A stretch of 63,930 nucleotides of DNA, filler included, from Octopus bimaculoides (GCF_001194135.2; 4 parts of 4 records of this genome joined end to end with filler, not necessarily neighbours in it), one strand, 5' to 3'; counted from the first letter of the whole stretch, positions 1-24,153 are shown. The notes: a model not told the origin generated them from the letters alone. Numbers and translations are program-made.

Positions 1-352
1 GTGCGGGTGGCACATGAGATGCACCATTTTGAGCGTGGCCGTTGCCAGTACCGCCTGACTGGCTCCTGTAGGATTTTCGAGCGAGATCGTTGCCAGTGCC
101 CCTGGACTGGCTCTTGTGCGGGTGGCACATAAAAGACACCATTTCGAGCGTGGCCGTTTTCGTGCGGGTGACACGTAAAAGCACCCACTACACTCTGAGT
201 GGTTGGCGTTAGGAAGGGCATCCAGCTGTAGAAACTCTGCCAAATCAGACTGGAGCCTGGTGTTGCCATCCGGTTTCAACAGTCCTCAGTCAAATCGTCC
301 AACCCATGCTAGCATGGAAAGCGGACGTTAAACGATGATGATGATGATGATG
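1..352 (+). mobile_element. 3' end of RTE-type LINE (or RTE-tailed SINE) with (GAT)n tail
   Basis: Family sequence ...ccaacccatgctagcatggaaagcggacgttaaacgatgatgatg, repeated many times in the window, with internal GC-rich subrepeats. Confidence 0.8.
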
Positions 353-529: not shown

Positions 530-1929
530 CTTTCCTTCCACTTTAGAGTGGACAACTTTTTTCATTTTTAAAATGTCATCAGCATTAATCAAATCAGGTG
601 TCCTTTCTCTGGAATTTTCTTGTTCCATCTTCTCTGGAACATTTTTATGTGATTTTGTAGATCGGGATTTGACATTTTTTGTACTAATTTCCTCGTTAAA
701 TTTTACTTTACTTAATCTGGATTGTTTTTTCTCTGAATTACAGCAGTCTGTTCCTGAATTCTTACTACCTGCTTTAACGGAAGAAGCTGATCGTGATCTA
801 TGTTGGGATGAACCAATTCTAGCGTTTTCTGTAGTTGAGTTGGTCAAAGATTCTCTCCGTATATGACTGCTTGATCTGCCTCTCCTCCTTAAAGGTACAT
901 TAGTGGAAATGTCATCATCTTGTAAAGCTTTTCTATAGCGCTCAAGAATGTCACTAACAGCACTTGATTGTTTTAATGAGGATACAATTCCTTTTTCCAA
1001 ATTTTCATGCTTTTGTGCTCTATCTTTGTGCGATTCATTCATTGTTGGTTTGCTGTTGGAGTTAGAAAGTTCAGAAATTTTCCCCTTAGGATTTTGAGAA
1101 GGACTTGAAATCACCATCTCAGAATCTTGCTTTAAACTATTTTTATTGGCTATTTTAGAATTTTCAGATTGTTTCATGCTTCCATCAGTCTTATCAGAAC
1201 CAAGCAATTCTAATCTCGTAGTAGTCTTTTGACAATTTTTATTAATTTCTGGTGTAGTTTGTGGTTTTATAACACTTGTATCAAAACTTTCATCAATTTC
1301 TGCATAACTAACAACTTTTGACCGTGTTCTGCGGGTAAGAGATCTCTCAGGAACATTAGTTTCACATGTAGATGTACGTTTATATAAGTTTTCATAGTCT
1401 TCATCGTCATTTATTTTTTTCCTTGAACGTGACTTTTTTTTAGCAACAGGCTGATCTTTAGTTAATAATTTCTTACACTGTGAAAGTTTCATCTTTTCTT
1501 CATTGCACTCATTAGAAATTCTGGATACAGTTTGGTTATCATTAATAATTTTTTCTGAATTATCTTTGACATCAGTAATCTCTTCTTTTTTCTTCTCTTT
1601 TGCCATGGCAACTCGCTCACGATATTGACCAAGACTTTGACATTTACCAAATGTAGAATCATTCAAAGAAACATTATAAATGCCTTCATCTTTTATGTCT
1701 TTCTTATTTAATAATTGAGGAGTTTTGTCATGGAAATCAAACAAAGATTTTGGTTCTTCCTTCTCTTTTTTCTCTTCATTAATTTTCTTTTTTGATCTGA
1801 CTTTGGGCGCAGATGGTCGAATACCAGAAAAATTTTTCCTTGTCGCGGAAAAAATAATCTTCCCAGGTTTTGGTAACCTTAACTCAATAACAGTTTTATT
1901 TTCATTATCATCAGTTTCTTTGCATTTAA
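530..1929 (-). CDS. SGO1: 1.4-kb basic, Ser-rich disordered exon, probably shugoshin middle/C-proximal region
   Basis: 466 open codons from acceptor TTTTTAG (1930-1931), beginning KCKETDDNENKTVIELRLPKPGK and in frame with ORF 515..1744. Likely donor AAG|GTAACT at 529; otherwise the frame stops at 515. Contains FDF-x3-TP and RRTRSKVVSYAE motifs. Confidence 0.82.
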
Positions 1930-2487
1930 CTAAAAAGACAAAAAAAAATAAAGTTTCTCAATTCAAATTGAAAACGGACCAGTTTGTTTCTTATTTTAAT
2001 AGAGAAACAATAGGAGAAAATATAAACAAATTAAGTTACCTTGAATTACTCTGTTGTCAATTTCATTACATTTCATATTTTAAAGATAGTGAATGAAAAC
2101 AAAAACAGATTTTGTTAACTATTTCATGCTAAGAAATATTTTTGAAATATTATGTTGCAATCTAAATGGTGGAATATATTTTTAAGGTGTCCAATGAGCC
2201 ACCCTCCATTAAAACTATTTATTCTCATATATCTCTACAGAGCTTTGGAGCATAATATTTAATTGCATCAAATTCATATAAGCATTTCTTCAAATAGATT
2301 CTGTAAATTTGTGGCTGTAGACCTGCCTTTTTTTGCAGGTCTACTGCAAAACTACTATGTTTTGCAGTACAAATTATGAATTACCATGTCAGTGAATGTT
2401 TTCACATAAGCAACATTTTTATATTTAGCATACCTTCGTTTTATTATAGAAAGGCAGTGAAACAAATTAGAAAAATGAAATACACAC

Positions 2488-3396
2488 CTCCTTCATCTTC
2501 CTTTTTATCCTTTGAGCTTTTTGACGATTTTTTGTTGCCTTTTGGTTTTACTTTCTTAGGTACTATTGCTGGTTTAACAAAAGTTTCTTTAGCAACAGTC
2601 ATATCTTTTTGTTTCTCCAGATTTATATCAGATGGATGAACATCATTACCAGTTGGTAAATTTTGTGATGACTCATGCATTACATCAGTGTTATTTATTA
2701 TTTCAGTCAATTCCATGTCAACTTCTCCATTTATTGTAGTGTTAGGTATGGCATTATTTAAACCATTATCAGCATCATTAACTACTANNNNNNNNNNNNN
2801 NNNNNNNNNNNNNNNNNNNNNNNNNNNNNNNNNNNNNNNNNNNNNNNNNNNNNNNNNNNNNNNNNNNNNNNNNNNNNNNNNNNNNNNNNNNNNNNNNNNN
2901 NNNNNNNNNNNNNNNNNNNNNNNNNNNNNNNNNNNNNNNNNNNNNNNNNNNNNNNNNNNNNNNNNNNNNNNNNNNNNNNNNNNNNNNNNNNNNNNNNNNN
3001 NNNNNTGGTTAGAGTTATTTTTAACTACTTTATCCCTGTCAGAAGATTCAGAACTATTTCTGTTCACTGATGTATTTGAATCCATTACAGCTGCATTTTC
3101 CAAATTAACTTCTTCTGCACAAGAATCTTTAATAACTGATGGATCTAAAATATCCAGTTGTTGGTGAAGGTTTTTATCAAGACCTGTAGCAGACAAGAGG
3201 AATGAAGAACGGCGCTTTTTTCGGGTAGCCGGGAGAGTTGTACCAAAATCGATTTCATTCAGAGATTCCTGTCTAATACTGGAACGTCTTTTTACATCAG
3301 GGTGACTTTTAGTAGCAATTTTAGGTTCTTCAATGGGGACGTCTAAATGTTGAATTTTGTCAGCATTTTTACACAATTTTTCAGATTCCAATTCAA
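2488..3396 (-). CDS. SGO1: Duplicated large low-complexity exon, downstream copy
   Basis: Paralogue of 5255-6022; acceptor at 3397-3398, donor at 2487; phase 1/1; 218-N gap inside. Splices in phase (G+TT) to the acceptor at 1929. Confidence 0.75.
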
Positions 3397-3744
3397 CTAA
3401 AAAATGAATAGGAAAAGAAAAGAGTTAGGTTTTTACTTTTATCATAGAAAACAAAATTATGAAGAATAATATCTTATTACTAGCTGGACCCATGAACAAT
3501 TCACGGAAAACATAAAAAATGTAAACATCTGTAAATTGAGTGCTGGTGCCATGAGAAATGTTTCTATATTGTGACAGTTACAGAATAAAGAAGTGTAAAA
3601 CCAATAACTATATAATCCAACCAAAATATCTGTTACGCAAACATAAACAGAATTACTATTTAGCCTTAAAATACAACATACATATTCAAAGAAACTTCTT
3701 GGTTTAGTGGTACGGAACGTTCTTGTGATATTCTTTTGTCCCTT

Positions 3745-3943
3745 TACTTGTTTCAGTCATTTAATGGTGGCCATGCTGGAGCACCGCTCTTTAGTTGAAG
3801 AAATTGACCCCTGGACTTATTATTCTCTGTAAGCCTGGTGCTTATTCTATCAGTCTCTTTTGCTGAACATCTAAGTTACGAGAACGCAACCACACCAACA
3901 TTGGTTGTCAAGCAATGGTGGTGGTGGGACAAACACACACACA
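3745..3943 (-). mobile_element. 3' part of the abundant SINE with internal microsatellite
   Basis: Reverse complement matches the 3' halves of the copies at 39260-39580 and 54218-54665. Confidence 0.7.
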
Positions 3944-4459
3944 NNNNNNNNNNNNNNNNNNNNNNNNNNNNNNNNNNNNNNNNNNNNNNNNNNNNNNNNN
4001 NNNNNNNNNNNNNNNNNNNNNNNNNNNNNNNNNNNNNNNNNNNAGTGCCCCTGGACTGGCTCATGTGCGGGTGACACATGAAATGCACCATTTATGTTTT
4101 CAGTACAACCCCTTTATCTACAGAGCAACAGATGATGATAATGGTACTCCAGTCTTTATGATAATACTTTGTCTAATTTCATTAACTCAACAACAATTCC
4201 TCAAAACCCTGCAGCTTTCTGTCTTTTGTATCCTATTCACTGCCAGATATTTTAAGCATAACTTGTATTTCATTCATGCTCTCCGTATAGCAAAATAATT
4301 TATAAATTACATAAACCAATAAAATTGGCCGTTTTCTCTGTTACTGGGTACAGCAAATGAAGGATCACAACAAGTGGTAACATGCTGCGATACATCCAAC
4401 CCATGCTTGCATAGAAAGCTAAATGTAAAAGGATCTGCTTATGTAAATATTTTTTTCAC

Positions 4460-4730
4460 CAAGAGCCCTGTGCTGGTGGCATGTAAAAAGCACCCATGCC
4501 AGCACCACATAATAGTGCCCATGCTGGCACCACAAAAGCACCCATGCCAGTGCCCCGTAAGGAAGGATCCCAGCACACTCTGTAAAATGGTTGGCATTAG
4601 GAAGGGCATCCAACTGCAGAAATCAAGCCACATCAAAGTGGAAACTGGTGCAGCTCTCCTGCTTGCCAACTCTGGTCAAACTGTTCAACCCATGCCAGCA
4701 TAGAAAACAGACATTAAATGATGATGATGA
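4460..4730 (+). mobile_element. RTE-family 3' end inserted in the duplicated intron
   Basis: Same family as 1-352 with GAT tail; interrupts homology to 9375-9900. Confidence 0.7.
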
Positions 4731-5254
4731 TAGTTACTCTTCTGCAAAGTTTTCAAAAGCATAAAACATTTGTTATACAATACTTTTGGCAAATTTACCA
4801 TGAATATCTGGAGTATTTAAACATGGAATATTTTAGAGTTAATCAAGTGTATTTGAAATAAAAATCCATCATTATTAAAGACACAGCAATCAAGCTTAGA
4901 TCATTAAAAATCCGGAGATATACATTTTTCTTCAAAACATCACTCATGATGTTTCTATAGAGTAAAACCTTTGTATTTAGTAAAGTTGACATTGGAGAAA
5001 TTTGAACTCAAACACTAGAGTGCTGGAATAAATACTGTAAGACCTTCCATCAAATGTTGTAATAAGTCTGTTAATTCCCCCCACCTTTCATTAAAGCTAT
5101 TTATTCTCACAGAGCACTGTATTTTGTTTTGTAGTAAAAATTATGAATTACCATGTCAGTGAATGCTTTCACATAAGCAGCATTTTTATATTTAGCATAC
5201 CTTCGTTTTATTATAGAAAGGCAGTGAAACAAATTAGAAAAATGAAATACACAC

Positions 5255-6022
5255 CTCCTTCATCTTCCTTTTTATCCTTTGAGCTTTTTGACGATTTTTT
5301 GTTGCCTTTTGGTTTTACTTTCTTAGGTACTATTGCTGGTTTAACAAAAGTTTCTTTAGCAACAGTCATATCTTTTTGTTTCTCCAGATTTATATCAGAT
5401 GGATGAACATCATTACCAGTTGGTAAATTTTGTGATGACTCATGCATTACATCAGTGTTATTTATTATTTCAGTCAATTCCATGTCAACTTCTCCATTTA
5501 TNNNNNNNNNNTTTATTGTAGTGTTAGGTATGGCATTATTTAAACCATTATCAGCATCATTAACTACTAAGGCTGTTTCTGCAGTTTTACCATTTGACAT
5601 TGATGCATCAGTACAAGGAATATGGTTAGAGTTATTTTTAACTACTTTATCCCTGTCAGAAGATTCAGAACTATTTCTGTTCACTGATGTATTTGAATCT
5701 ATTACAGCTGCATTTTCCAAATTAACTTCTTCTGCATAAGAATCTTTAATAACTGATGGTTCTAAAATATCCAGTTGTTGGTGAAGGTTTTTACCAAGAC
5801 CTGTAGCAGACAAGAGGAATGAAGAACGGCGCTTTTTTCGGGTAGCCGGGAGAGTTGTACCAAAATCGATTTCATCCAGAGATTCCCGTCTAAATTCAAT
5901 ACTGGAACGTCTTTTTACATCAGGGTGACTTTTAGTAGCAATTTTAGGTTTTTCAATGGGAACATTTAAATGTAGATTTTCATCAGCATTTTTACACAAT
6001 TTTTCAGATTCCAATTCATCAA
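5255..6022 (-). CDS. SGO1: Duplicated large low-complexity exon, upstream copy (probably shugoshin middle region)
   Basis: Open frame DELESEKLCKNAD...SKDKKEDEG; TTTTTAG acceptor at 6023-6024; donor G|GTGTGT at 5254; phase 1/1. Contains a 10-N gap that looks like an overlap artefact. Assignment to SGO rests on strand, block and phase, not homology. Confidence 0.75.
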
Positions 6023-7819
6023 CTAAAAAATGAACGAGAAAAGAATTAGTTTTTCTCTTTATCATGAAATAATGATAAACAACAATAAGCAAATATTATA
6101 TAGAATAGAATTCTATTTTCCCCAGGGTTTTAATGATGTATCACAACTTTAATTACAATTTTATCATAATTATCTATTTATCTCTGTGCCATTGATTTGT
6201 TTTTTGATAATGTCAAGCAAAATAGAAACATCAAGAAAATAGACTTGAAAAATATTTCATGAAAAACATTCATGAAATCTCAATCAGTATAAAACAATTA
6301 AAAAATTTGAAAAAGAACATTACTTTTAAAATGGAACATAAGTACATAAGAAACTTTATAAGAAAAGTCTGTGTAACTGCATTTTGATCTCATAATCATC
6401 GAGATCATTTTACTTGGAAAAAATACTCGCTACCACCATCAAAGGATAGAAAACATTCCATAACTGAATATAGAGATTATCTTTGATGTTATAAAGTTCT
6501 CTAAAAAAATATTGCTAGTAGATTAGCTTCTGCTGTTCCTCAGCTATATCAAATGTTCATAAATGAAACGTTGTGATGCCAGGAAATGAGATTGGTTAAT
6601 TGATAATCTAATTATAAAGGGGAACCAAATGCATAAGTATTTCTTTTATTATAATAATGGGGCCTCTGCAATCAAAGCTGACCATTCATCTGCAAGCAGG
6701 GGTGACTTTTTTTTTTTTTTACCAATCCATGTAACTCTTCCCTCTCCAATACCACCAAGGCTGCCTAAGGGAAAAGCTGCTGAGTTGGCTGATGCAGCTT
6801 GACACCCATGCCACCACAGGTGTTTCTACAGTGTACAGAACCAGAAAATGATATTGTAAGGCATCTTCTTTGACCTAGCAGTTTTACCAATCCACTACCC
6901 TGAATTTTTTTTTTTTTTGTCATCCTTGAAAATTTGAAAGGCAAAATTGACATCATCATCACCATCATCTTTTAATATCCACTGTCCATGCTAGCATGGG
7001 TTAGACAGGACCTCATGAAATTTGAGCACAGAGTTGGAACAAATACCACAAGGCATTTTATTCAACACTAACAACTATGCTATTTTGTCTTTCATTATAC
7101 TTCTAATGTGTTAAAGTGGTGTCTGAAAAACATCTCCGAAATTCTGTAATAGATTTTATATAAAATTTTACCTCATTTTTTTTTTTAATTACAGGCACAT
7201 ACAGTGACAATTATTTAAATATCACCATATACAATAAGTTGTTAGTAATTTATGATTTCGTCAGTTTGTCCTTGTTTTGTTTACATTTTCTGACTCAATT
7301 TAGGCTGTAGTGAAAATTTTGGTTGAAATGATATCCTTGGATTTATGTCCACCCTGATTGGTTCAGGTGGCATCACTGACAGCAGCTCATCGGTTAGTTC
7401 ACTTGTTAGTTCATATGCTTTTTCTTCAGATGCATGAAGAATTGCATGAGATTTTATAGGAACCATGTTCTATTGTTACCATATTCCTACTTTTCTAGAC
7501 AACTATAAATGAGCTTGCCTTGAAAGGTAGAGACAGTCTCTTCATTGCTGTATGAACACACTGTTGTCCATGCGAAGTGAAGAATCTGGGTGCATCACAT
7601 CTGGTCTGCATATCTTTTTTATTTTATCACTGTTCTGAACATTATTCAAGGTTATGCAGGAATGTATTGTCAAAGAAGTTTCATAATGCATGACACCAAG
7701 TAGAATGACATTCATCTTCCTCCTATCAAGGGCCTCAAAGAGGGACACTGGTTGCACTGTGGGGAGTTACCATGCATTAGTAAAGAAAGTAGGGTAAATC
7801 TGCCTTCCAGTTTTGGCCT

Positions 7820-8115
7820 TCCACCATCATCATCATCATCATCGTTTAACGTCCGCTTTCCATGCTAGCATGGGTTGGACGATTTGACTGAGGACTGGCA
7901 AGCCAGAAGGCTGCACCAGGCACCAATCTGCTTTGGCAGAGTTTCTACAGCTGGATGCCCTTCCTAGCACCAACCACTCCGAGAGTGTAGTGGGTGCTTT
8001 TACGTGCCACCGGCATGAAGGCCAGTCACACGGTACTGGCAATGGCCACGCTCAAAAAGGTATTTTTTATGTGCCACCTGCATGGGAGCCAGTCCAGCGG
8101 TACTGGCAAATACTA
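7820..8115 (-). mobile_element. RTE-family 3' end
   Basis: Reverse complement of the 1-352 family, with (CAT)n at the left. Confidence 0.75.
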
Positions 8116-10628
8116 ATGAATGTGTTCATAGTTCTCAAGAAGCATTCAACTTTGCCATTAGCATCAGACCAGTGAGTGGTAACCTTCCTGTGATGAAACA
8201 TACACTGATTAACAAAATGATGACCTTAGAAAGGAGGTTCTTTATCAATTTTGACAATTGCTGGTAAGTCTTGTAGGCAAATATGGAATTCAGACAAGGA
8301 GTAACAACTTTTGTTGACCTTGATGACTAGTAACACCAGCTACCGCTGGTGTTACCAGTACCATTCCTGATATCAAGATGAACTGAGAGAGGGTTGTGGT
8401 TGCTTTCTCTGATGTCACCTCAGCCACAACTGGAACTAACTCCATTGTATAGAACATTGATAGTGCTTGTCTCCATAGTTGCAGCTCTTACTTCATCAAG
8501 AACTTAATTCAGAAATAGTTACCTGGCAAAGCTTTACATCTAACCCTTGTGGAAAAACAGCTTTGCAAAATCTGTGCCAAGATTTCTCTATTGACATCAT
8601 AAAATTCACATACTGCAGTCAACAATTGCAGCCTCATGTAAGAGGAGTCTGTTCTCCAGGGCTAAGAGAAAAGATAGACTTTGAAATAGCCTGTCCTTTT
8701 TGGCATAAAGTAATCAGTCAATGAATGTTTTATCTTATGTTCAGCAGAAACATCAACACTACTCACACTGCACAGAGCACCAACACCTCTCTCTATGTCT
8801 ATGAAACTATCAAAGATGTTGAATATCTCTTACCCAACATAACAAAACAGTATCACTTTTCTATTACAGTCACTAATCACATAAGGTGTTCATGACAGAT
8901 TTTCAAAATGTTCTATTCATTTTCATTATCTAGAGCCACTAGACTGCATTATTGTACACAGAATGGAAGAAAGAGAAGCATTACAACTGACATGTTATAT
9001 TAACAGGATTGAAATCAACAAATAGAGAGGAAAATTGTTTCTTAAGTTTATATCCTTTATAAGTCTTGTTGCCAAACATATTTTCTTCAGTTCATGAGAA
9101 ACATATACCAATTTTTCAATTACATTTTAAAAGAGAAAAACAAGATACATTAACATGATTTTTAGTTTAACCTGGCTGTCACTTTTCCTTGTCCAAATGC
9201 TGTTTTATGGTGCAATTGTAAACAATACTACTCTACACTACAATTGGAGATAATCAAACTTACATTTACATTAGAAGTAAATATAGTTCCATATCCTTGT
9301 ACAACAGCAAATTTCACCTTATACTTTTGTTTCGACTCTTTTAATAGTTTTTCTAATTTGATCTGTGTACTCAAGAATTTATTTTTCAGTACAACCCCTT
9401 TATCGTCCCAGTAGCAGATGATGATAATGGTACTTCAGTCATTGACAATATCTTTTTGCGTAACTGCATTAACATTGCAACAAGAATTCCTCAAAACCAA
9501 ATAACACACAGCAACAAAGATCAGCAGTTACTACCACAATAAGTGGTGACATGCTCAGAGTTACATGTATCCTATGCTAGCATAGAAAGCTGGATGTAAA
9601 ATGGGCTTATGTAAATTTTTTTTACATGAAATTAGTTACATTTCTGTACTTCTCCAAAACATTTTTAATACAATATTTTTGGTAAATTTATCATAAATAT
9701 TTGTAATATTTAAACATGTAATATTTACCTTTAGACAACACATCAAGTGTATTTGAAGTATAATCTGTATCAATAAAAGTCTCAGCTATGAAGCTAAGAT
9801 CATTACAAATCTGGGAATTAACATTTTTCTTTAAGGCAACATCACCTATGGCATCTTTATTGAGCAAAATCTTTTCATTAGGGTTTCTAAATACAAAAAG
9901 AAAGATTGTAACATTAAATAATGAACAAATTCACTAAAGTATATACAGGACGTAAAGAAAGAAACATGAAACAAGGTATTGCATTTACCTTTGGCCTGTC
10001 CTGTGTATTACATATGATATACAGGACATATTTTCTGGGTGTCCATGCATCATATATGACACACATTCCCAATTTTTATCAACCACCAACTTGGGACTTT
10101 TCAAAAGAAAGCTTTATATTACTCAAAACGTATGAAACAAGGCCTAACTAAAAGCCTGAAAACAAGCATGGATATTTAGGATAAACTTACGAAAATGCTT
10201 TGGACAGGCCAAGCGTTAATCGTTTTTAAAAAATCAACTACTGATAAGACATCAAAGCTTACAGATAATGTGAATGACAATATGCTACACTGTTCTCTGC
10301 TTAAAGGATAGTATCTAATACTGATATCTTCCAAAAGATATAAAAACATTAGTTTATATTAAATTTTAAGTGTACAAACTTATGTTATATACTCTACTTT
10401 TCCATGCTCGCATGGCTCAGATGGAATTTAATGAAGCAGGTTTTCTACAGTTGGACGCCTCCTAACACTAACCTTCATCTGTTTCTAAAGTAATATTTTA
10501 CATGGCCAGACATTGTTTTTCACAGAAAATTGGAAAGAAACATCATTTGAATAAAGGTGATGCTCATTTACAACCATCATGTGATGTCAAGACAAGAGTA
10601 CACACACACACTCATGCATGTGTGTATG

Positions 10629-10718
<90 letters not shown>

Positions 10719-11378: not shown

Positions 11379-12720
11379 TTTCATTCTCAGGCTGCTCCAA
11401 GAAAAGTGCCAGGAGCAAAACAAAGCACTTTATGCAACATTTGTCGATCTGATAAAAGCGTTTGACACTGTGAGCAGAAAGAGTCTATAGCAGTTCCCAA
11501 AATTCCTAACCATGATCATCCAGCTTCACGAAGACCAACAAGGACAAGTTTGCCTGAATAGCGACATATCAGCCATTCCCCATCAACAACAGCGTGACGC
11601 AGAGCTGTATCCTAGCACCAACTCTTTTCAGCATCTTCTTCAACATGATACTCAAGCAGGCCACTGCAGACCTTGATACTGAAGATGTCTGGATGGCAGT
11701 CTTTTCAACCTCCAGTGCCTACAGGCCCACACCAAGACCCAAGAGCAACTGATCCAGGACCTCCTCTTTGCAGATGATCTGCACTTGTTGCACACAGAGA
11801 AAGAGCCCTGCAACACATCACATTCTGCTTTGCAGAGGCCACCCAGCACTTCAGGCTGGAATCCGGTCAGACACCAACCAGTTCCTCAGGAAGAGTACAG
11901 CCTGCCCCACATCACCATTGCCAAAACAGAACTGAAATCCATACAGCAGTTCACTTAACTTGGATGTACCATCTCATCAGATGTGAGCATCGACAAAGAA
12001 ATTGACAACAGACCTGCAAAGGCAAGCAAAGCATTTGGCAGACTGTAGAAGCATGTGTGGAACAGCAAGGTCAACACAAAAGTCAGTCGTTCTCGCGATT
12101 TTTCTATATGGCTCTGAGTACTGGATCCCCTACTGCTATCATCTCAGACTCCTCAAACGTTTTCATCTATGCTTCCTCAATACCATCCTCAACACTGAAG
12201 CGACTACATTACCAACACTGAGGTCCTCGAGTGAGCAAAGATCACCAACATGGAAGCCATTTTACTTAAGACATGACTGTGTTGGGTAAGGCATGTTGAC
12301 AGGATGAAAGACCACCACCTACTCAAGATCATCACGTATGGTGAGCTCACCACCAGCCACCACAACAGGGGGACACCAAGGAAGTGTTACGACTGCCTGA
12401 AGTAGTCCCTTAGTGTTTGTAACATTGATTATCATGAGTGATCCACACTAACAACTGACCATGTCACTTGGCACCATACCATCAGTGATGTTGTTGGCTC
12501 TTTTGAGATCTCTCACAGTACCTCTCTTAAAGAAAAACGTCAGAGGCAAAAAAAAAAACAATGCAGCTGTATCATCAGACCCTGAACAACCATACCCCTG
12601 TCATCACTGCAATCAGATATGTCGATCCCATGTTGGCCTTATCAGCCATGAATGAGCGTGCAGACGACGTGGACAACAGCCTTCCTAATCTTCGTCAGCA
12701 ATGCCAAGCCAAGAAGAAGA
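11379..12720 (+). mobile_element. Degenerate RTE/BovB-like LINE, RT region to 3' end
   Basis: QEKCQEQNKALYATFVDLIKAFDTVSR, ILAPTLFSIFF, LLFADD motifs with frameshifts; ends in a zinc-knuckle-like PYPCHHCNQICRSHVGL and an (AAG)n tail. Confidence 0.85.
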
Positions 12721-15057
12721 TATAGATATACACACACACGCTAACAATCACGCAAACATACACACACACACACACACACCCAAGCATACACACCCTTGCA
12801 CACATAACCCACATATACCCCCATTCACAAATACCTCCCACACACCTGACAACCCATACATACCCCCATCCACACATACCTCACATACCTCCCATACACC
12901 TACACACACACCTTACATATATACCGCCCACATACATGCGCGCCCTCACACACACATAGACGAACACACATATATACACACACACACCCATATACACGCG
13001 CACGCCTACATACACAGCTGCATACACACAGGAGTGCACACACAAAATAACACACATACCTAGCACACATCCTTACGCTCTCACACACATACGCATGCAC
13101 ACACATAAACACCTCTCACATACACAAAACCACACACACACACACATACACATATACACACATGCACACATACACATATACACACATGCACACACACCTC
13201 TCACATACACAATATACACATACACGCACACACAAAAAATATACACACACGCGCACACACACATACAGACACACATAAACACACACACACCCGTACCTAA
13301 CACTCACAATCCCACACACACTNNNNNNNNNNNNNNNNNNNNNNNNNNNNNNNNNNNNNNNNNNNNNNNNNNNNNNNNNNNNNNNNNNNNNNNNNNNNNN
13401 NNNNNNNNNNNNNNNNNNNNNNNNNNNNNNNNNNNNNNNNNNNNNNNNNNNNNNNNNNNNNNNNNNNNNNNNNNNNNNNNNNNNNNNNNNNNNNNNNNNN
13501 NNNNNNNNNNNNNNNNNNNNNNNNNNNNNNNNNNNNNNNNNNNNNNNNNNNNNNNNNNNNNNNNNNNNNNNNNNNNNNNNNNNNNNNNNNNNNNNNNNNN
13601 NNNNNNNNNNNNNNNNNNNNNNNNNNNNNNNNNNNNNNNNNNNNNNNNNNNNNNNNNNNNNNNNNNNNNNNNNNNNNNNNNNNNNNNNNNNNNNNNNNNN
13701 NNNNNNNNNNNNNNNNNNNNNNNNNNNNNNNNNNNNNNNNNNNNNNNNNNNNNNNNNNNNNNNNNNNNNNNNNNNNNNNNNNNNNNNNNNNNNNNNNNNN
13801 NNNNNNNNNNNNNNNNNNNNNNNNNNNNNNNNNNNNNNNNNNNNNNNNNNNNNNNNNNNNNNNNNNNNNNNNNNNNNNNNNNNNNNNNNNNNNNNNNNNN
13901 NNNNNNNNNNNNNNNNNNNNNNNNNNNNNNNNNNNNNNNNNNNNNNNNNNNNNNNNNNNNNNNNNNNNNNNNNNNNNNNNNNNNNNNNNNNNNNNNNNNN
14001 NNNNNNNNNNNNNNNNNNNNNNNNNNNNNNNNNNNNNNNNNNNNNNNNNNNNNNNNNNNNNNNNNNNNNNNNNNNNNNNNNNNNNNNNNNNNNNNNNNNN
14101 NNNNNNNNNNNNNNNNNNNNNNNNNNNNNNNNNNNNNNNNNNNNNNNNNNNNNNNNNNNNNNNNNNNNNNNNNNNNNNNNNNNNNNNNNNNNNNNNNNNN
14201 NNNNNNNNNNNNNNNNNNNNNNNNNNNNNNNNNNNNNNNNNNNNNNNNNNATGGTCTGGTTATTGTGACTGAAGAGGAGATAACTAATCCAAAATGCAAT
14301 GCATCCCATAGTTTGGTCAGGTAGCACTGCAAGCTGATTAGGTGTATTTACACTCATTTGTCAACAGTGAGAAATTTTCTCCATAACAAAACACAGTGAA
14401 AAGCTTTCTTATGGTCAAGTAGATTTGAACTGGTAACAAGTTTGCATTTATACACATCACTGCTTAGCACTGTTACCCTGTATTTTATTTACAGTGAGCT
14501 GCTTGGATAAGTGTTGATCTCAGAAGACTTTTGACAGAAACCCTTGCTCTGTAATTTGGTGGTTGGTAAGGAAACTGGAGATAAATGGCTTGTGAAGGCC
14601 ATACAAATCTGTACAGAGGGGCAGTAAGTAATGAAACACCTGTCTTGAATTTCCCTGTTATGGCCTAGAAAAAACTAATAAGGAAAGTGACCTAAGAACC
14701 AAATCTTGGTGAGCATCTAACTAAATGCTAAGTTTCTCACTGAACTTCTTGCTAACTTTTACTTTGCTAACTACACCTCTGTACAAGGCTTGCATGGATC
14801 TTGCAAGCCATTCATCTACCCCCAGTTTTCTTAGCATTTATCAAACTGAATGATGACAGGAGTATCATAAGAGAGATATGGTCTCTCATCACTGCCCTGT
14901 CTCATTTTTGTGGGTGAAGAAGAGAAAACTACTCCGAAATGTAATGCATCCCAGTCTGGGCAGGTGACGTTGTGAGCCAATCCAGTATTTAAACCCAATT
15001 GTTAAAAGTGAAAAATGTTCTTTATGATGAAACACAGCTATTCATATTATATCTTAC

Positions 15058-15392: not shown

Positions 15393-15463
15393 TCCTTATC
15401 TTCTCCAATACCATTGACTGTTCCTGAAAAGGAGTCATAAAAATTGTCAAATTTAGTCTGAAC

Positions 15464-15504
<41 letters not shown>

Positions 15505-16499
15505 NNNNNNNNNNNNNNNNNNNNNNNNNNNNNNNNNNNNNNNNNNNNNNNNNNNNNNNNNNNNNNNNNNNNNNNNNNNNNNNNNNNNNNNNNNNNNNNN
15601 NNNNNNNNNNNNNNNNNNNNNNNNNNNNNNNNNNNNNNNNNNNNNNNNNNNNNNNNNNNNNNNNNNNNNNNNNNNNNNNNNNNNNNNNNNNNNNNNNNNN
15701 NNNNNNNNNNNNNNNNNNNNNNNNNNNNNNNNNNNNNNNNNNNNNNNNNNNNNNNNNNNNNNNNNNNNNNNNNNNNNNNNNNNNNNNNNNNNNNNNNNNN
15801 NNNNNNNNNNNNNNNNNNNNNNNNNNNNNNNNNNNNNNNNNNNNNNNNNNNNNNNNNNNNNNNNNNNNNNNNNNNNNNNNNNNNNNNNNNNNNNNNNNNN
15901 NNNNNNNNNNNNNNNNNNNNNNNNNNNNNNNNNNNNNNNNNNNNNNNNNNNNNNNNNNNNNNNNNNNNNNNNNNNNNNNNNNNNNNNNNNNNNNNNNNNN
16001 NNNNNNNNNNNNNNNNNNNNNNNNNNNNNNNNNNNNNNNNNNNNNNNNNNNNNNNNNNNNNNNNNNNNNNNNNNNNNNNNNNNNNNNNNNNNNNNNNNNN
16101 NNNNNNNNNNNNNNNNNNNNNNNNNNNNNNNNNNNNNNNNNNNNNNNNNNNNNNNNNNNNNNNNNNNNNNNNNNNNNNNNNNNNNNNNNNNNNNNNNNNN
16201 NNNNNNNNNNNNNNNNNNNNNNNNNNNNNNNNNNNNNNNNNNNNNNNNNNNNNNNNNNNNNNNNNNNNNNNNNNNNNNNNNNNNNNNNNNNNNNNNNNNN
16301 NNNNNNNNNNNNNNNNNNNNNNNNNNNNNNNNNNNNNNNNNNNNNNNNNNNNNNNNNNNNNNNNNNNNNNNNNNNNNNNNNNNNNNNNNNNNNNNNNNNN
16401 NNNNNNNNNNNNNNNNNNNNNNNNNNNNNNNNNNNNNNNNNNNNNNNNNNNNNNNNNNNNNNNNNNNNNNNNNNNNNNNNNNNNNNNNNNNNNNNNNNN

Positions 16500-17721: not shown

Positions 17722-18330
17722 ATCATCATCATCAAACGTCTGTTGTCCATGCTGGCATGGGTTGGACAGTTTGACAGGGGCTGTTAAGTTAGAAGACTGC
17801 ACCAGACACCAGTCTGATTTGACATGGTTTTCTATAGCTGGGTGACCTTCCTAACGCCAACCACTCCAAGAATGTAATATGTGCTTTTACATGCCACTGG
17901 CATGGGTGCCATTTGCATGACACTGGGGTGCTTTTATGTGCTACCAGCACAGGTACCAATTTGCATGACACTAGTATCTGCCACAACTGCAATTTTGCTC
18001 AGCTTGATAGATCTTTTTCTGAAGCATGACATAATGCTAAAGGTCTTGATCATTGCCTCCATGAGGCCCAACACTTGAAAGGAATTGGCCATTTTGCCTC
18101 TGGGAGGCCCAACGCTTGAAAGGAACTCATCTAGGAGGCCCAACACTCGAAAGGAACTCATCTAGGAGGCCCAATGCTCAAAAGGAACTCATCCGAGAGG
18201 CCCAATGCACAAAAGGAACTCATCCGAGAGGCTCAATGCTCAAAAGGAACTCATCCAGGAGGCTCAATGCGCAAAAGGAACTCATCCAGGAGGCCCAATG
18301 CCCACTTTGCCTCCATTCCTTTTGAGCATT
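17722..18330 (-). mobile_element. RTE-family 3' region including a 31-bp tandem repeat
   Basis: Family 3' end at the left; about 6 copies of aaggaactcatctaggaggcccaacactcga at 18120-18305. Confidence 0.7.
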
Positions 18331-18356: not shown

Positions 18357-18532
18357 TCTGTAGGAGTTTTTTCTATATTTCGTCCAATTTCTATTGAGTT
18401 TGATCTTGAGTTAGCAGCTGGTGTAGATAAATAAGATACAATACTTTCAGAAATCTCTTGTACTGTTGAAGTAACAATGGTAAGATGTTCACCAATATCT
18501 GAAACCTTTTGCTTAATCATCATCAGAATAGG
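18357..18532 (-). CDS. SGO1: Shugoshin exon following the coiled coil (PILMMIKQKVSDIGEHLTIVTSTVQEISESIVSYLSTPAANSRSNSIEIGRNIEKTPT)
   Basis: CAG acceptor at 18533-18534, open frame in phase 0 matching the upstream exon, donor GTAAGT at 18356 (phase 2 out). Confidence 0.78.
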
Positions 18533-18619: not shown

Positions 18620-19620
18620 TAAAATAAAGACAGAATGATCAGAAGCACAGCAGAAGGAAACTTCTGCGTAGCTTAAAGGAAAACTTCCATTTCTCTTTGA
18701 AAAGTAGAAAGGGCCATTAAAAATATGAAGACAGGAGAAGTAAGAACACCATTGGGGATAGCTGTCAAGATGTTGAAATTGAAAAATTGAAAAATTGTAC
18801 CAGGCCTGAAAAGAATGGAAGAGGAAGGAAAGAAAGAACAATATCAAGAAGTTAGAAGAGAAGCTATACATCAAGTGAAAATTGAAAGAAGAGGAACAAA
18901 GGATCTGAATTGTGGTATTCAGAATTCCAAAACAGTATCAATCAGGATATAGTTCATGAAAAATACAAAGTATCACAGTTGTCTTCATTGACACTAAAGA
19001 AAAACCTAGCAGGGAAATACTACAATAAGCTAAACAAAGAGAATGCATAGAAGAATAGGGGGATAACTGAGTAGATCCAACAGAAGGACTAACAATTTAG
19101 GTTAACTAAAGTAAACAAGCCTGTTAAAATAAGGCAGAAAAAGTAGCAGGACTATCAGGAGATGTACTACAAAAGAGGAATAAATTAGACGCATTAAACT
19201 GATGGATCAAAACATGAAAGGAGTAGAGAGAGTTTACATCACAGCTTATCAGAGTGACAATCAGCTTAAACAAGGTGCAGTTTAGATTTGTACTAGGATT
19301 GGGAATTACTGATGCAATTTTTTTAGTGAAACAGCTACAGAAGTTCTTACCTAAAAGCAAACTGATTAAACATCATCTATTGACCCACAAAAAGCTTTTG
19401 ACAAGTTACCATGCTCTGTAGTTTGATAAATGCTATGAAAAATGGGGGTAGATGAATGGCTTGCAAGAGCCATGCAAGCCTTGTACAGAGGTATAGTTAG
19501 CAAAGTAAAAGTTAACAAGAAGATCAGTGAGAAACTTAGCATTTAGTTAGATGCTCACCAAGATTTGGTTCTTAGGTCACTTTCCTTATTAGTTTTTCTA
19601 GGCCATAACAGGGAAATTCA
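18620..19620 (+). mobile_element. Highly degenerate RTE LINE (pre-RT and RT region)
   Basis: Remnants resembling 23817-24153 (QF.FV.G..TDAIFLVKQLQ; GVDEWLARAMQALYRG) with many stops and frameshifts. Confidence 0.65.
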
Positions 19621-20014
19621 AGACAGGTGTTTCATTACTTACTGCCCCTCTGTACAGATTTGTATGGCCTTCACAAGCCATTTATCTCCAGTTTCCTTAC
19701 CAACTACCAAATTACAGAGCAAGGGTTTCTGCCAAAAGCCTTCTGAGATCAACACTTATCCAAGCTATGCAGTTATCTCACCAAGAATATAGCATCAATG
19801 GTACCTCTTCCTGGGACAAAATCAAACTGCATCGCATCCAAACTAGTCTTGCCAGTAATCAGTTTCACAATTTTTTTCTCTAACTTTCATAACCTGGTCC
19901 AATAGTGGATGAATTAAATGACAAACTAATACTCAGTAGATTGAAATAAATGGTGATGATATCTAGTTTAGCTTATAATAAATATGAGTCTCCTGAATGA
20001 TTTTGCTTGTTAAG

Positions 20015-20744: not shown

Positions 20745-21700
20745 CAGTACCATGCAAAAGTCTTTGGCACTTTAAACTATTGTTTAAATAAGTGAGAATT
20801 TGTCAGAAGGCCTCCAATAAAGCAAAATGACAAAAACGTTACATGACAAAAACAGTTAAGTTTGGGACAAATTAAAATTATGTTAATTAATTTCTTCTAT
20901 TCCTGAATCGTTATTGTGTATGTTTGTGTATTTTCAAGTATGTCTAGATTTATTTCATTTTTGATGCTTTGAAGATACATGAAAAGTGATGGTTCAAGAA
21001 AGTTGGTTAAAATTGACAGTAACTTAAATAGTGCCAAATACATCCAGTTACTGAAGGACAGTTTGTTACCAGACTTGGATGAAGGGGATATTTTTCAGCA
21101 TGACAGAGCTCCATGCCACAGATTGCGTGCAACACAACAGAGTCTGGCTGATGAAGGTGTCACCGTATTGAAAGATTGGCCAGCTCAGAGCCCTAACTTA
21201 AATATTATCAAGCAAATGTGAACAGAACTAAAGAGAAGAGTTCATCAGAAGAATCCACACAATCTTAAAGAGTTGTGGGAGCTCAGCCACAGAGAATGGC
21301 ATTTCATACCTGTGAAGATGGTGAAGGATATGTATGCATCTCTTCCCAGGCACATTGAAGCAATTATTCAAGCTATGGGAAGCCACACAAAACATTAACA
21401 ATGTACAGTAACTTCGTGAAATGAACATTACGTAATAAATTTTCTGTTTTAAAACACTATATCTTGATTGGTTTATGTGAAGTGGCCGAAAACTTTTGAA
21501 CAGCCATTTTTGGCGGTCATCTCACATTTTCCCCTCTCATTCAGAACCCCTACTACAAAATATAATGATTAGATATGGAAATGACTCCAACAGGGCCAAT
21601 GTTTCATTTGTAATAAACGCAATGTGAAACATTCACTTAAGTTGGTGATTAGTAGAATTTACAAGAGTTTAAAGTGGCCGAAGACTTCTGCATGCTACTG
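20745..21700 (+). mobile_element. Internally deleted Tc1-like transposon with intact TIRs
   Basis: About 33-bp imperfect TIRs (cagtaccatgcaaaagtctttggcactttaaa and its reverse complement), TA on both sides; C-terminal transposase IFQHDRAPCH...WPAQSPNLNII at 20979-21400 with a stop. Confidence 0.85.
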
Positions 21701-21857: not shown

Positions 21858-22066
21858 CTTCAACCGAGCACCAACTTGCTCTTCAAGACAATGTGAAGCC
21901 ATATACTTATTACCGGCAGCTTCAAGCATCAGATTTCTATTATCCAACCTAAGAGAAGAGATGACGTTAGTGGCCCATGCTAAGTCTTGCTTTGCAACCT
22001 GTAATGCATAAGCTAGAGCTTTGTTGTTAGATCTCAATGTTTGTTTCATTTTTGTTGAAGCATTTA
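21858..22066 (-). CDS. SGO1: Shugoshin exon encoding the N-terminal coiled coil (PP2A-binding region)
   Basis: Translates NASTKMKQTLRSNNKALAYALQVAKQDLAWATNVISSLRLDNRNLMLE..., matching the shugoshin N-terminal pattern as recalled for vertebrate SGO1/SGO2 (..LKxNNxALAxAL..). Polypyrimidine tract and AG acceptor at 22067-22068; donor AAG|GTAAGC at 21857; phase 1 in, phase 0 out. Confidence 0.88.
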
Positions 22067-23799: not shown

Positions 23800-24153
23800 A
23801 GCTGTTAGATCAGGTTATGAAAGTTACAGAGAGGGTCATAGCCCAACTAATTAGGGAGCGAATCAATTTAGATGAGATGCAGTTTGGGTTCGTGCCAGGT
23901 AAAAGCACTACTGATGCCTTATTTCTAGTGAGACAGTTGCAGGAGAAATACCTAGCTAAGGATAAACCTCTGTACCTGGCTTTCGTTGACATGGAGAAAG
24001 CCTTTAACAGGGTCCCCCGATCCCTTATCTGGTGGTCAATGAGGAAACTTGGGATAGAAGAATGGTTAGTGAGAGCTGTGCGAGCCATGTACAGAGATGC
24101 TGCCAGTAAGGTGAGGGTTGGAAATGAGTACAGCAATGAATTCCGGGTAGAGG
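23800..24153 (+). mobile_element. RTE-clade reverse transcriptase fragment truncated by the scaffold spacer
   Basis: Uninterrupted QFGFVPGKSTTDALFLVRQLQEKY...LAFVDMEKAFNRVPR...; typical RTE RT domains 0-2. Confidence 0.9.

What the first reader, a model, noticed from the sequence alone, without database searches (positions are those of the whole stretch)
2170..6090. Tandem duplication of a ~260-codon symmetric exon in shugoshin, with an identity gradient suggesting gene conversion
Seen: two copies (5255-6022 and 2488-3396) each keep an AG acceptor, a GT donor and an open frame, both phase 1/1, so either or both can be spliced in. The visible 5' parts differ by 11 amino acids and two indels (3 nt and 6 nt, both frame-preserving); I counted only about 3 synonymous changes. 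The 3' part and the first ~110 nt of the downstream intron are almost identical (one mismatch seen), while more distal intronic paralogy is far more diverged. Known: shugoshin middle regions are disordered and fast-evolving, and SGO1 is alternatively spliced in vertebrates. Inference: an old duplication kept functional and locally homogenised by conversion, giving a lengthened linker or alternative (e.g. mitotic vs meiotic) isoforms in a centromere-cohesion protector.
Basis: partly seen in the sequence, partly recalled or inferred. Interest (0 to 1): 0.7.

Follow-up and report, generated by a model that had tools for sequence, protein, structure and literature searches.

The report
Duplicated, self-homogenising exon in octopus shugoshin
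An octopus gene for a shugoshin-like chromosome-cohesion protector carries two tandem copies of a large, roughly 250-codon exon; the duplication is old, and gene conversion keeps the two copies nearly identical within each species, which is a clean but not unprecedented case of exon-level concerted evolution.

Summary
On the minus strand, exon copy A (6022..5255) and copy B (3396..2488) each have an AG acceptor, a GT donor and an open frame, and both are phase 1/1. The window is Octopus bimaculoides LOC106875105.

It is not an assembly or haplotype artefact. Gap-free assemblies of O. sinensis and O. vulgaris show the same layout, X–E–X'–E'–next exon, and Argonauta hians also has two copies. 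The duplicated unit was a segment holding two exons. The copy of the upstream 158-nt exon (X', about 4984..4836) has lost both splice sites in all three Octopus species. Its inclusion would shift the frame.

Site patterns across species are decisive:
- In the exon plus about 135 nt of downstream intron, 37 sites group the two copies by species and 0 group them by position.
- In the flanking intron, 0 sites group by species and 82 group by position (Fisher p about 1e-31).

This is bounded, ongoing gene conversion on an old duplication.

Shugoshin identity is reasonably supported: Shugoshin_C is the top Pfam hit on the full orthologues, and human SGO1 is the top PDB hit for the N-terminal profile. 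Both hits are sub-threshold.

Annotated O. sinensis and O. vulgaris proteins contain both copies. Use of copy B in O. bimaculoides, and any regulated isoform switch, remain untested. This is a new member of a known kind, of moderate interest.

The parts
21858..22066 (-). Exon encoding the N-terminal coiled coil (NASTKMKQTLRSNNKALAYALQ...ARLK); phase 0 donor
   Evidence: Splice sites and exact match to RefSeq protein P0019. A profile of this region has human Shugoshin-like 1 (3FGA_D) as its top PDB hit, E 0.062.
18357..18532 (-). Next coding exon (PILMMIKQKV...TPTE)
9729..9886 (-). Exon X, 158 nt (length mod 3 = 2), NPNEKILLNKDAIGD...DVLSK. This is the first exon of duplication unit A.
5050..9886 (-). 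Duplication unit A (X, intron, exon E copy A, about 200 nt of downstream intron)
   Evidence: Blocks 9377-9879 are colinear with 4090-4977 at 75-81% identity, and 6069-5081 matches 3450-2199.
5255..6022 (-). Exon E copy A (753 nt once the 10-N gap artefact is collapsed; 251 codons; phase 1/1)
   Evidence: This is the copy used in RefSeq XP_052826535.1 (P0019).
5502..5511 (.). 10-N gap with overlapping contig ends (ATAAA on both sides); no real sequence appears to be missing
5135..5926 (-). Minimum extent of the gene-conversion tract in copy A (first to last site where both copies share a species-specific base). It is bounded by position-specific sites at 6035 and the GAT indel (6019-6017) upstream, and at 5114 downstream.
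4985..5049 (-). Head-to-tail junction between unit A and unit B
4836..4984 (-). X', a decayed copy of exon X. The acceptor AG and donor GT are lost, and the same lesions occur in O. sinensis and O. vulgaris.
4543..4731 (.). SINE inserted in the inter-copy intron. It is absent at this site in O. sinensis and O. vulgaris.
3944..4043 (.). 100-N gap of unknown size in the inter-copy intron. It corresponds to 13.2 kb in O. sinensis and 7.7 kb in O. vulgaris.
2488..3396 (-). Exon E copy B (about 744 nt if the 218-N gap stands for 53 nt; phase 1/1). Its splice sites are intact.
   Evidence: An older O. bimaculoides model, P0013, starts in it.
2788..3005 (.). 218-N gap inside copy B. It replaces 53 nt present in copy A and in all orthologous copies.
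2368..3303 (-). Minimum extent of the gene-conversion tract in copy B
530..1929 (-). Following exon (VKCKETDD...VEGK), entered in phase 1 from either copy. The donor is AAG|gtaact. The C-terminal SGO motif lies beyond the window.

Best explanation
**What it is.** An ancestor of Octopus bimaculoides, O. sinensis and O. vulgaris underwent a head-to-tail tandem duplication inside its shugoshin-like gene. The duplicated segment was a few kilobases long and held two exons: X (158 nt) and E (about 750 nt).

**What happened to the second copies.**
- The second X copy (X') cannot be spliced in without shifting the reading frame. It lost both splice sites and decayed.
- The second E copy (E', 'copy B') is 3n long and phase 1/1. 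It can be included in frame, and it kept its open frame, branch point, acceptor and donor.

**Gene conversion.** Since the duplication, repeated non-reciprocal recombination between the two E copies has homogenised a bounded tract of about 0.8-0.9 kb. The tract runs from just inside the 5' end of the exon to about 135 nt into the downstream intron. As a result the copies evolve in concert within each species, while their outer flanks diverge independently. In O. bimaculoides the most recent conversion covered the 3' two-thirds of the exon and the first 74 nt or so of intron. The 5' third has since accumulated 14 substitutions and two in-frame indels.

**Effect on the protein.** A protein that includes both copies carries the 250-residue, weakly constrained middle module twice. 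The module holds three conserved short motifs: RRESLDEIDFG, RKKRRSSF and EVDMELTEI.

**Shown versus inferred.**
- Shown: the structure, the age order, the conversion tract, and frame compatibility.
- Inferred: that both copies are spliced into O. bimaculoides mRNA (taken from annotated sister-species proteins), and the reason X' died.
For: **Same architecture in other assemblies.** X–E–X'–E'–next exon is found in gap-free O. sinensis (L001) and O. vulgaris (L003) loci as well as in O. bimaculoides.

**Tandem arrangement.** The unit A end (about 5081-5049) and the unit B start (4977) abut. Unit B blocks 4090-4977 are colinear with 9377-9879.

**X' is dead.**
- X' lacks the acceptor AG and the donor GT, with the same lesions in all three species.
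- X is 158 nt, so length mod 3 = 2.
- Copy B read one frame off hits a stop after 17 codons.

**Concerted evolution of a bounded tract.**
- Exon plus proximal downstream intron: 37 species-grouping and 0 position-grouping sites.
- Flanks: 0 species-grouping and 82 position-grouping sites. Fisher p = 1.2e-31.
- The GAT indel at the start of the exon is position-specific in all three species.

**Age.** K(X,X') is 0.36-0.40, against K = 0.08 between O. bimaculoides and O. sinensis X'.

**Within-species identity of the exon copies.** 14/691 differences in O. bimaculoides, 5/696 in O. sinensis and 3/696 in O. vulgaris, against about 40/699 between O. bimaculoides and O. sinensis.

**Annotated proteins.**
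- Both copies are present in O. sinensis isoforms X1-X4 and in O. vulgaris CAI9728244.1. Only copy A is present in O. sinensis X5.
- The A. hians protein has two in-frame copies of 528 and 945 nt.

**Constraint.** E has dN/dS 0.57 between species, so it is weakly constrained coding sequence.
Against: - No transcript data were available here. The RefSeq O. bimaculoides model (P0019) uses copy A only, although copy B contains an assembly gap that would hinder modelling.
- Between the two O. bimaculoides copies dN/dS is about 1.0. When polarised, copy B carries 7 nonsynonymous and 0 synonymous changes plus a 6-nt deletion, while copy A carries 3 synonymous and 2-3 nonsynonymous (Fisher p = 0.07). 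Copy B's 5' part could therefore be relaxed, or even unused, in this species.
- Both exon-internal gaps lie in the perfectly identical tract, so its perfect identity may be partly an assembly product.
- Whether the Argonauta duplication is the same event could not be resolved.
Confidence: 0.85

Rival explanations
1. Assembly artefact. The two copies are the two haplotypes, or overlapping scaffold ends, of a single exon that were placed one after the other across gaps.
For: - Three gaps sit in or between the copies.
- The 100-N gap is a conventional 'unknown length' join.
- The 10-N gap has overlapping ends.
- The identity change coincides with contig breaks.
Against: - Gap-free assemblies of O. 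sinensis and O. vulgaris carry both copies with the same flanks and the same dead X'.
- The flanks of A and B are each orthologous across species: 82 position-grouping sites.
- Upstream homology between A and B stops 54 nt from the exon and downstream homology stops after about 175 nt, whereas alleles would align throughout.
- X and X' differ by about 30%.
Confidence: 0.02
2. The duplication is real and old, but copy B is a silent pseudo-exon in O. bimaculoides. On this view conversion from copy A, not selection, keeps it looking intact.
For: - The RefSeq O. bimaculoides protein P0019 lacks copy B.
- A/B dN/dS is 1.04.
- All 7 polarised copy B changes are nonsynonymous, and copy B also has a 6-nt deletion.
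- Conversion alone can preserve an open frame and a donor inside the tract.
Against: - The acceptor, polypyrimidine tract and CTAAC branch point of copy B lie outside the conversion tract, yet they are intact and conserved in all three species.
- Both indels in the unconverted 5' part are multiples of 3, and no stop has arisen.
- Sister-species annotated proteins include copy B.
- X', which cannot be used, decayed. This shows what disuse looks like at this locus.
- The copy B model is handicapped by its 218-N gap.
Confidence: 0.12
3. The similarity of the copies is due to purifying selection on both, or to independent recent duplications in each species, rather than to gene conversion.
For: E is coding and has conserved short motifs. 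Interspecies dN/dS is 0.57.
Against: - Homogenisation extends about 135 nt into the intron and covers synonymous sites. All 37 informative sites in the tract group by species.
- Independent duplications are excluded by position-specific orthologous flanks, by the shared GAT indel, and by shared X' lesions.
Confidence: 0.01

Closest known systems
Tandem exon duplication in animal genes (the class described by Kondrashov & Koonin 2001 and Letunic, Copley & Bork 2002; cited from my own knowledge)
   Same: There are two adjacent homologous exons in one gene. They have the same phase and a length that is a multiple of 3, and each has its own splice sites.
   Different: - Here the duplicated unit held two exons and one of them died.
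- The annotated sister-species proteins contain both copies, so these are not mutually exclusive alternatives.
- The exon is unusually long, at about 750 nt.
Concerted evolution of paralogues by interlocus or intragenic gene conversion (for example PMC2720389 and PMC3924837)
   Same: - Paralogues are more alike within a species than orthologues are between species.
- There is a discrete homogenised tract with diverged flanks.
- The pattern persists long after the duplication.
   Different: The converted units are two exons of the same gene, only kilobases apart, rather than two genes. The tract runs from the first few nucleotides of the exon into the downstream intron.
[quoted passage not shown]
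   Same: It is a large in-frame central exon of about 250-270 codons. It lies between the N-terminal coiled coil and the C-terminal SGO motif of a shugoshin, and it can be left out without breaking the frame.
   Different: - No sequence homology between the octopus exon and human exon 6 was shown here.
- The human exon is not duplicated.
- Regulated skipping in octopus is not shown.
RefSeq / GenBank gene models LOC115216772 (O. sinensis), CAI9728244.1 (O. vulgaris), LOC106875105 (O. bimaculoides)
   Same: These are the same gene. The O. sinensis X1-X4 and O. vulgaris models already contain both exon copies.
   Different: - They are annotated only as 'uncharacterized protein' or 'Shugoshin C-terminal domain-containing protein'.
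- The duplication, the dead X' and the conversion tract are not described.
- The one paper found that mentions both shugoshin and octopus is a hemolymph immune-response study by title and abstract. I did not open it.

Membership tests
Shugoshin (SGO) family | C-terminal basic SGO motif (Pfam Shugoshin_C, PF07557) | tested here: inconclusive
   - The motif lies outside the window.
- On the full-length O. bimaculoides model P0013 it is the only Pfam hit: E 1.5e-4, 21.9 bits against a cut-off of 23.3, profile positions 2-23 of 24, at the C-terminus.
- It is also the top hit in O. sinensis, A. hians and a more distant cephalopod transcript.
- The sequence reads KRPRRTAIKSISYREPALNLKLRQGDKLF.
Shugoshin (SGO) family | N-terminal coiled coil (Pfam Shugoshin_N; the PP2A-binding region) | tested here: inconclusive
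   - No Pfam Shugoshin_N hit at E<=10 with single sequences, and no single-sequence PDB hit.
- A 7-sequence profile of the region gives human Shugoshin-like 1 (3FGA_D) as its best PDB hit out of 177,635 sequences, but at E 0.062. The alignment covers NNK-L--AL.
Shugoshin (SGO) family | Centromeric protection of cohesin | not testable with these tools
   This needs cell biology.
Tandem exon duplication | Two adjacent homologous exons, in the same orientation and the same gene | tested here: met
Tandem exon duplication | Both copies keep splice sites, the same phase, and a length that is a multiple of 3 | tested here: met
   -.
- Copy A is 753 nt. Copy B is about 744 nt if its gap stands for 53 nt.
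- The A. hians copies are 528 and 945 nt.
Mutually exclusive exon pair | Exactly one of the two copies is present in each mRNA | tested here: not met
   - Annotated O. sinensis X1-X4, O. vulgaris and A. hians proteins contain both copies in tandem.
- Inclusion of both preserves the frame.
- These are gene models, not reads.
Concerted evolution by gene conversion | Paralogues are closer within a species than orthologues are between species | tested here: met
   - Within-species exon differences are 14/691, 5/696 and 3/696, against about 40/699 between O. bimaculoides and O. sinensis.
- 37 species-grouping sites and 0 position-grouping sites.
Concerted evolution by gene conversion | Flanks outside the tract show orthology by position, so the duplication predates speciation | tested here: met
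   - 82 position-grouping sites against 0 species-grouping sites in the flanks.
- Shared GAT indel and shared X' lesions.
Concerted evolution by gene conversion | Homogenisation includes non-coding and synonymous positions, so it is not selection alone | tested here: met
   - 7-9 species-grouping sites in the first 135 nt of the downstream intron.
- dS between the O. bimaculoides copies is 0.036, against 0.093 between species.

The most novel reading that the evidence does not exclude
In octopods, the one shugoshin-like gene seen here may use the duplicated module as a regulated switch. Isoforms with one copy or with two copies of the 250-residue motif-bearing module would be made in different cell types (for example mitotic against meiotic). 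On this reading, conversion is tolerated or favoured because the number of copies of the docking motifs, rather than sequence difference between them, is what matters.
Probability: 0.1. Interest if true: 0.6.

Novelty: new member of a known kind. Interest (0 to 1): 0.4.

Why it matters
- **A clean natural example.** Exon-level concerted evolution is seen here with both boundaries of the conversion tract mapped to within tens of nucleotides. A built-in control, X', shows what happens to a duplicated exon that cannot be used.
- **A larger middle region.** Where both copies are included, the duplication doubles the roughly 250-residue E module, which holds three conserved short motifs, in a protein central to chromosome segregation. 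Octopod shugoshin may therefore differ functionally from the single-copy form seen in other cephalopod transcripts.
- **A practical annotation problem.** Short-read assembly breaks inside the identical tract. The current O. bimaculoides models are inconsistent because of this: one uses only copy A and another starts in copy B. RNA-seq junction reads from the near-identical donors may be hard to assign to a copy.

Tried and rejected
- **Word-indexed protein search with exon A alone.** It found nothing. The exhaustive representative search was needed to find the orthologues.
- **Pfam on window-encoded pieces.** No shugoshin domain was found. Single-sequence PDB searches gave nothing or noise.
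- **A candidate exon at 7469..7284.** I first considered it, but it has a poor acceptor and the wrong phase. It is not in any orthologous protein, so I rejected it.
- **The 9377-9879 / 4090-4977 paralogy as a transposon.** I first thought it might be one. I rejected that because 9886..9729 is a coding exon of the gene and the arrangement is conserved across species.
- **A third copy of exon E in the window.** None was found.
- **X' in Argonauta.** The only strong block is a SINE. Octopus and Argonauta introns do not align, so whether the two duplications are the same event is unresolved.
- **Looking up O. sinensis isoform X2 by exact product.** This failed because only the longest isoform is indexed. 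X1 worked.
- **Transcript contigs with both copies.** No octopus Logan transcript ORFs were present among the hits, so no direct RNA evidence could be obtained.

Full report
**What is in the window.**

The gene lies on the minus strand. Copy A of the exon is 6022..5255 and copy B is 3396..2488. Each follows ttcattttttAG and precedes GTgtgtat, and each is open in the frame that begins with two bases completing a codon and ends with one base. Both are therefore phase 1/1.

A→B, A→next exon and B→next exon all keep the frame. The next exon starts at 1929 with TT, so the carried G gives GTT.

BLAST and MAFFT alignment show that homology between the copies runs from 6069 to about 5081 in A and from 3450 to about 2199 in B.

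**Gaps.**

- *10-N gap, 5502-5511.* It has ATAAA on both sides. Removing the Ns and one ATAAA (15 nt, in frame) gives the sequence found in copy B and in all O. sinensis and O. vulgaris copies. With that correction, the spliced exons 22066..21858, 18532..18357, 9886..9729, 6022..5255 and 1929..530 translate exactly to RefSeq protein XP_052826535.1 of Octopus bimaculoides (P0019). The window is therefore O. bimaculoides LOC106875105. The chromosome-level assembly, locus L004, carries the same three gaps.
- *218-N gap in copy B.* It stands where copy A and all orthologues have 53 nt. If B is like them it is 744 nt and in frame.
- *100-N gap, 3944-4043.* It is in the intron between the copies and corresponds to 13.2 kb in O. 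sinensis and 7.7 kb in O. vulgaris. The real distance between the copies is probably many kilobases more than written.

- In the 129 alignable codons of the 5' part there are 11 nonsynonymous and 3 synonymous differences, plus a 3-nt and a 6-nt indel. dN/dS is 1.04.
- All exonic differences lie between 6022 and 5700.
- There are no mismatches from 5699 to 5181, including the first 74 nt of the intron.
- Six mismatches follow between 5180 and 5122, and homology then breaks.
- At the 5'-part rate, zero differences in the roughly 457 comparable bases has probability about 5e-8.
- One caution applies. Both exon-internal gaps lie inside this identical tract, so local assembly may have used reads from the other copy.

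**It is a true head-to-tail duplication of a two-exon segment.**

- The intron between the copies (plus-strand 4090-4977) is colinear with 9377-9879 at 75-81% identity.
- The end of unit A homology (about 5081-5049) and the start of unit B homology (4977) are within about 70 nt of each other.
- The exhaustive protein search found orthologues. These show that 9886..9729 is a coding exon, which I call X: NPNEKILLNKDAIGD...DVLSK, 158 nt.
- The 'diverged intronic paralogy' at about 4984..4836 is therefore a decayed copy of exon X, which I call X'.
- X' has lost the acceptor AG and, through a small deletion, the donor GT.
- X is 158 nt, so its length mod 3 is 2. Splicing X' between the two E copies would put copy B out of frame, and copy B in that frame stops after 17 codons. 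This is a sufficient reason, by inference, for X' to have died while the 3n-long E' survived.

**Other species.**

*Proteins.* The word-indexed search with orthologue P0001 as query and the cluster lookup named the proteins:
- O. sinensis LOC115216772 isoforms X1-X5;
- O. vulgaris CAI9728244.1, which UniRef names 'Shugoshin C-terminal domain-containing protein';
- Argonauta hians GAB1601099.1.

*Which copies they contain.*
- O. sinensis X1-X4 and the O. vulgaris protein contain both E copies in tandem.
- X5 contains only copy A, shown by the A-specific residues VDELE, TTQK, AEV and NNSK.
- The A. hians protein has two copies of 528 and 945 nt, both in frame.
- Three intronless transcript contigs from other RNA-seq runs (SRR30931883, SRR29271457, SRR23936171; species not determined here) encode clearly related proteins with a single E module.

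*Genomic loci.* I fetched the loci for O. sinensis (L001), O. vulgaris (L003) and A. hians (L002). None of them has gaps. tblastn shows the order X–E–X'–E'–next exon in all three Octopus species. This disposes of the haplotype or assembly-artefact explanation.

**Concerted evolution.**

I aligned the six Octopus copies with their flanks and classified quartet site patterns for O. bimaculoides against O. sinensis.

| Region | Sites grouping copies by species | Sites grouping copies by position |
|---|---|---|
| Exon | 30 | 0 |
| First 135 nt of downstream intron | 7 | 0 |
| Upstream intron, including the 55 nt next to the exon | 0 | 35 |
| Distal downstream intron | 0 | 47 |

- Fisher's exact test on 37/0 against 0/82 gives p = 1.2e-31. 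Using O. vulgaris instead of O. sinensis gives the same picture.
- The 3-nt GAT indel at the very start of the exon is present in copy A and absent in copy B in all three species.
- The tract spans at least 5926..5135 in copy A and 3303..2368 in copy B. It is bounded by position-specific sites at 6035/3409 and 5114/2322.
- Exon differences within species are 14/691, 5/696 and 3/696. About 40/699 separate O. bimaculoides from O. sinensis.
- X against X' differs by about 30% (K 0.36-0.40). Orthologous X' copies differ by 7-8% between O. bimaculoides and O. sinensis. The duplication is therefore several-fold older than that species split.
- This is the signature of repeated gene conversion on an old duplication, as described for paralogous genes (PMC2720389, PMC3924837).

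**State of copy B in O. bimaculoides.**

I polarised the A/B differences using the O. sinensis and O. vulgaris copies. Copy A carries 3 synonymous and 2-3 nonsynonymous derived changes. Copy B carries 7 nonsynonymous, 0 synonymous and a 6-nt deletion (Fisher p = 0.07). This hints at relaxed constraint, or adaptive change, in the 5' third of copy B, but it is not significant.

Against disuse:
- Copy B's acceptor, pyrimidine tract and CTAAC branch point lie outside the conversion tract and are conserved.
- Both indels are multiples of three.

Between species E has dN/dS 0.57, so it is weakly constrained coding sequence.

**Is it shugoshin?**

- Pieces encoded in the window give no Pfam shugoshin hit.
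- Full-length orthologues, including the O. bimaculoides model P0013, have Shugoshin_C as their top Pfam hit at the extreme C-terminus. E is 1.5e-4 to 4.5e-3 at 17-22 bits, just under the 23.3-bit cut-off. That exon lies beyond the window.
- A profile of the N-terminal coiled coil (alignment A1) has human Shugoshin-like 1 from the PP2A complex 3FGA as its best PDB hit, at E 0.062.
- Together with the domain order this makes a shugoshin homologue likely, though each test alone is sub-threshold.
- Human SGO1 also has a large in-frame central exon whose skipping yields sSgo1; exon 6 encodes 268 residues (PMC10751581). This is an analogy. Homology between the two exons was not shown.

**What remains open.**

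- No transcript reads were available. The sister-species proteins are gene models.
- Whether the Argonauta copies come from the same event is unresolved.
- The mitotic/meiotic isoform idea is untested.

**Verdict.**

This is a new, well-delimited member of a known kind: tandem exon duplication maintained by gene conversion. It sits in a gene of biological interest and is already present, but undescribed, in public gene models.

Noticed in passing
window 14501-14847 and 19420-19765: Two copies of a repeat with short reverse-transcriptase-like ORF fragments (by eye; no Pfam hit). They are 97% identical, in inverted orientation, and lie in the introns on either side of coding exon 18532..18357. 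Inverted intronic repeats flanking an exon can promote back-splicing or inversion.
   Followed up: partly
window 23817-24152 (+) and 20979-21218 (+): Transposon remnants inside introns. One is a reverse-transcriptase fragment (RVT_1, E 2e-9). The other is a DDE_3 (Tc1/mariner-type) transposase fragment (E 2.9e-6, just under the cut-off).
   Followed up: partly
window 163-345, 4543-4731, 7832-8017, 17722-17974; also 3750-3943: Several copies of one SINE family, plus a second SINE type that abuts the 100-N gap. The copy at 4543-4731 is absent at that site in O. sinensis and O. vulgaris. A related SINE occurs in the Argonauta locus.
   Followed up: partly
window 10619-10712; 12700-13320; 15462-15504; 18099-18301: A palindromic (TA/TG)n microsatellite. 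CA-rich low-complexity runs that abut the large gaps at 13323-14250 and 15505-16499. A 31-nt tandem repeat.
   Followed up: no
window 2488-6022; proteins P0019 and P0013: The public O. bimaculoides gene models disagree because of the gaps. RefSeq XP_052826535.1 uses copy A only and reads across the 10-N gap. The older model UPI00071C1EEC starts in copy B and splices around the 218-N gap.
   Followed up: yes
window 5255-6022 and 530-1929 (minus strand): Short motifs conserved from Octopus to distant relatives. RRESLDEIDFG, RKKRRSSF and EVDMELTEI lie in the duplicated exon. ELRLPKPGKIIFSA and SLFDFHDKTP lie in the next exon. The last of these resembles, from memory only, the [FY]xF...TP cohesin-docking type of motif. 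A PDB sequence search gave no support.
   Followed up: partly
L002 7386-7910 and 9901-10842 (Argonauta hians): In Argonauta the homogenised part is the 5' 376 nt of the exon, at 97.3% identity. The 3' parts differ greatly: copy 1 lacks the EVDMDLTEI region and copy 2 carries PKVKEVPV repeats. This is the opposite polarity to O. bimaculoides.
   Followed up: partly
L001 26-31 kb (O. sinensis inter-copy intron): The inter-copy intron in O. sinensis holds long arrays of short tandem repeats, which gave many overlapping self-hits. This probably explains why the short-read O. bimaculoides assembly has a gap there.
   Followed up: no
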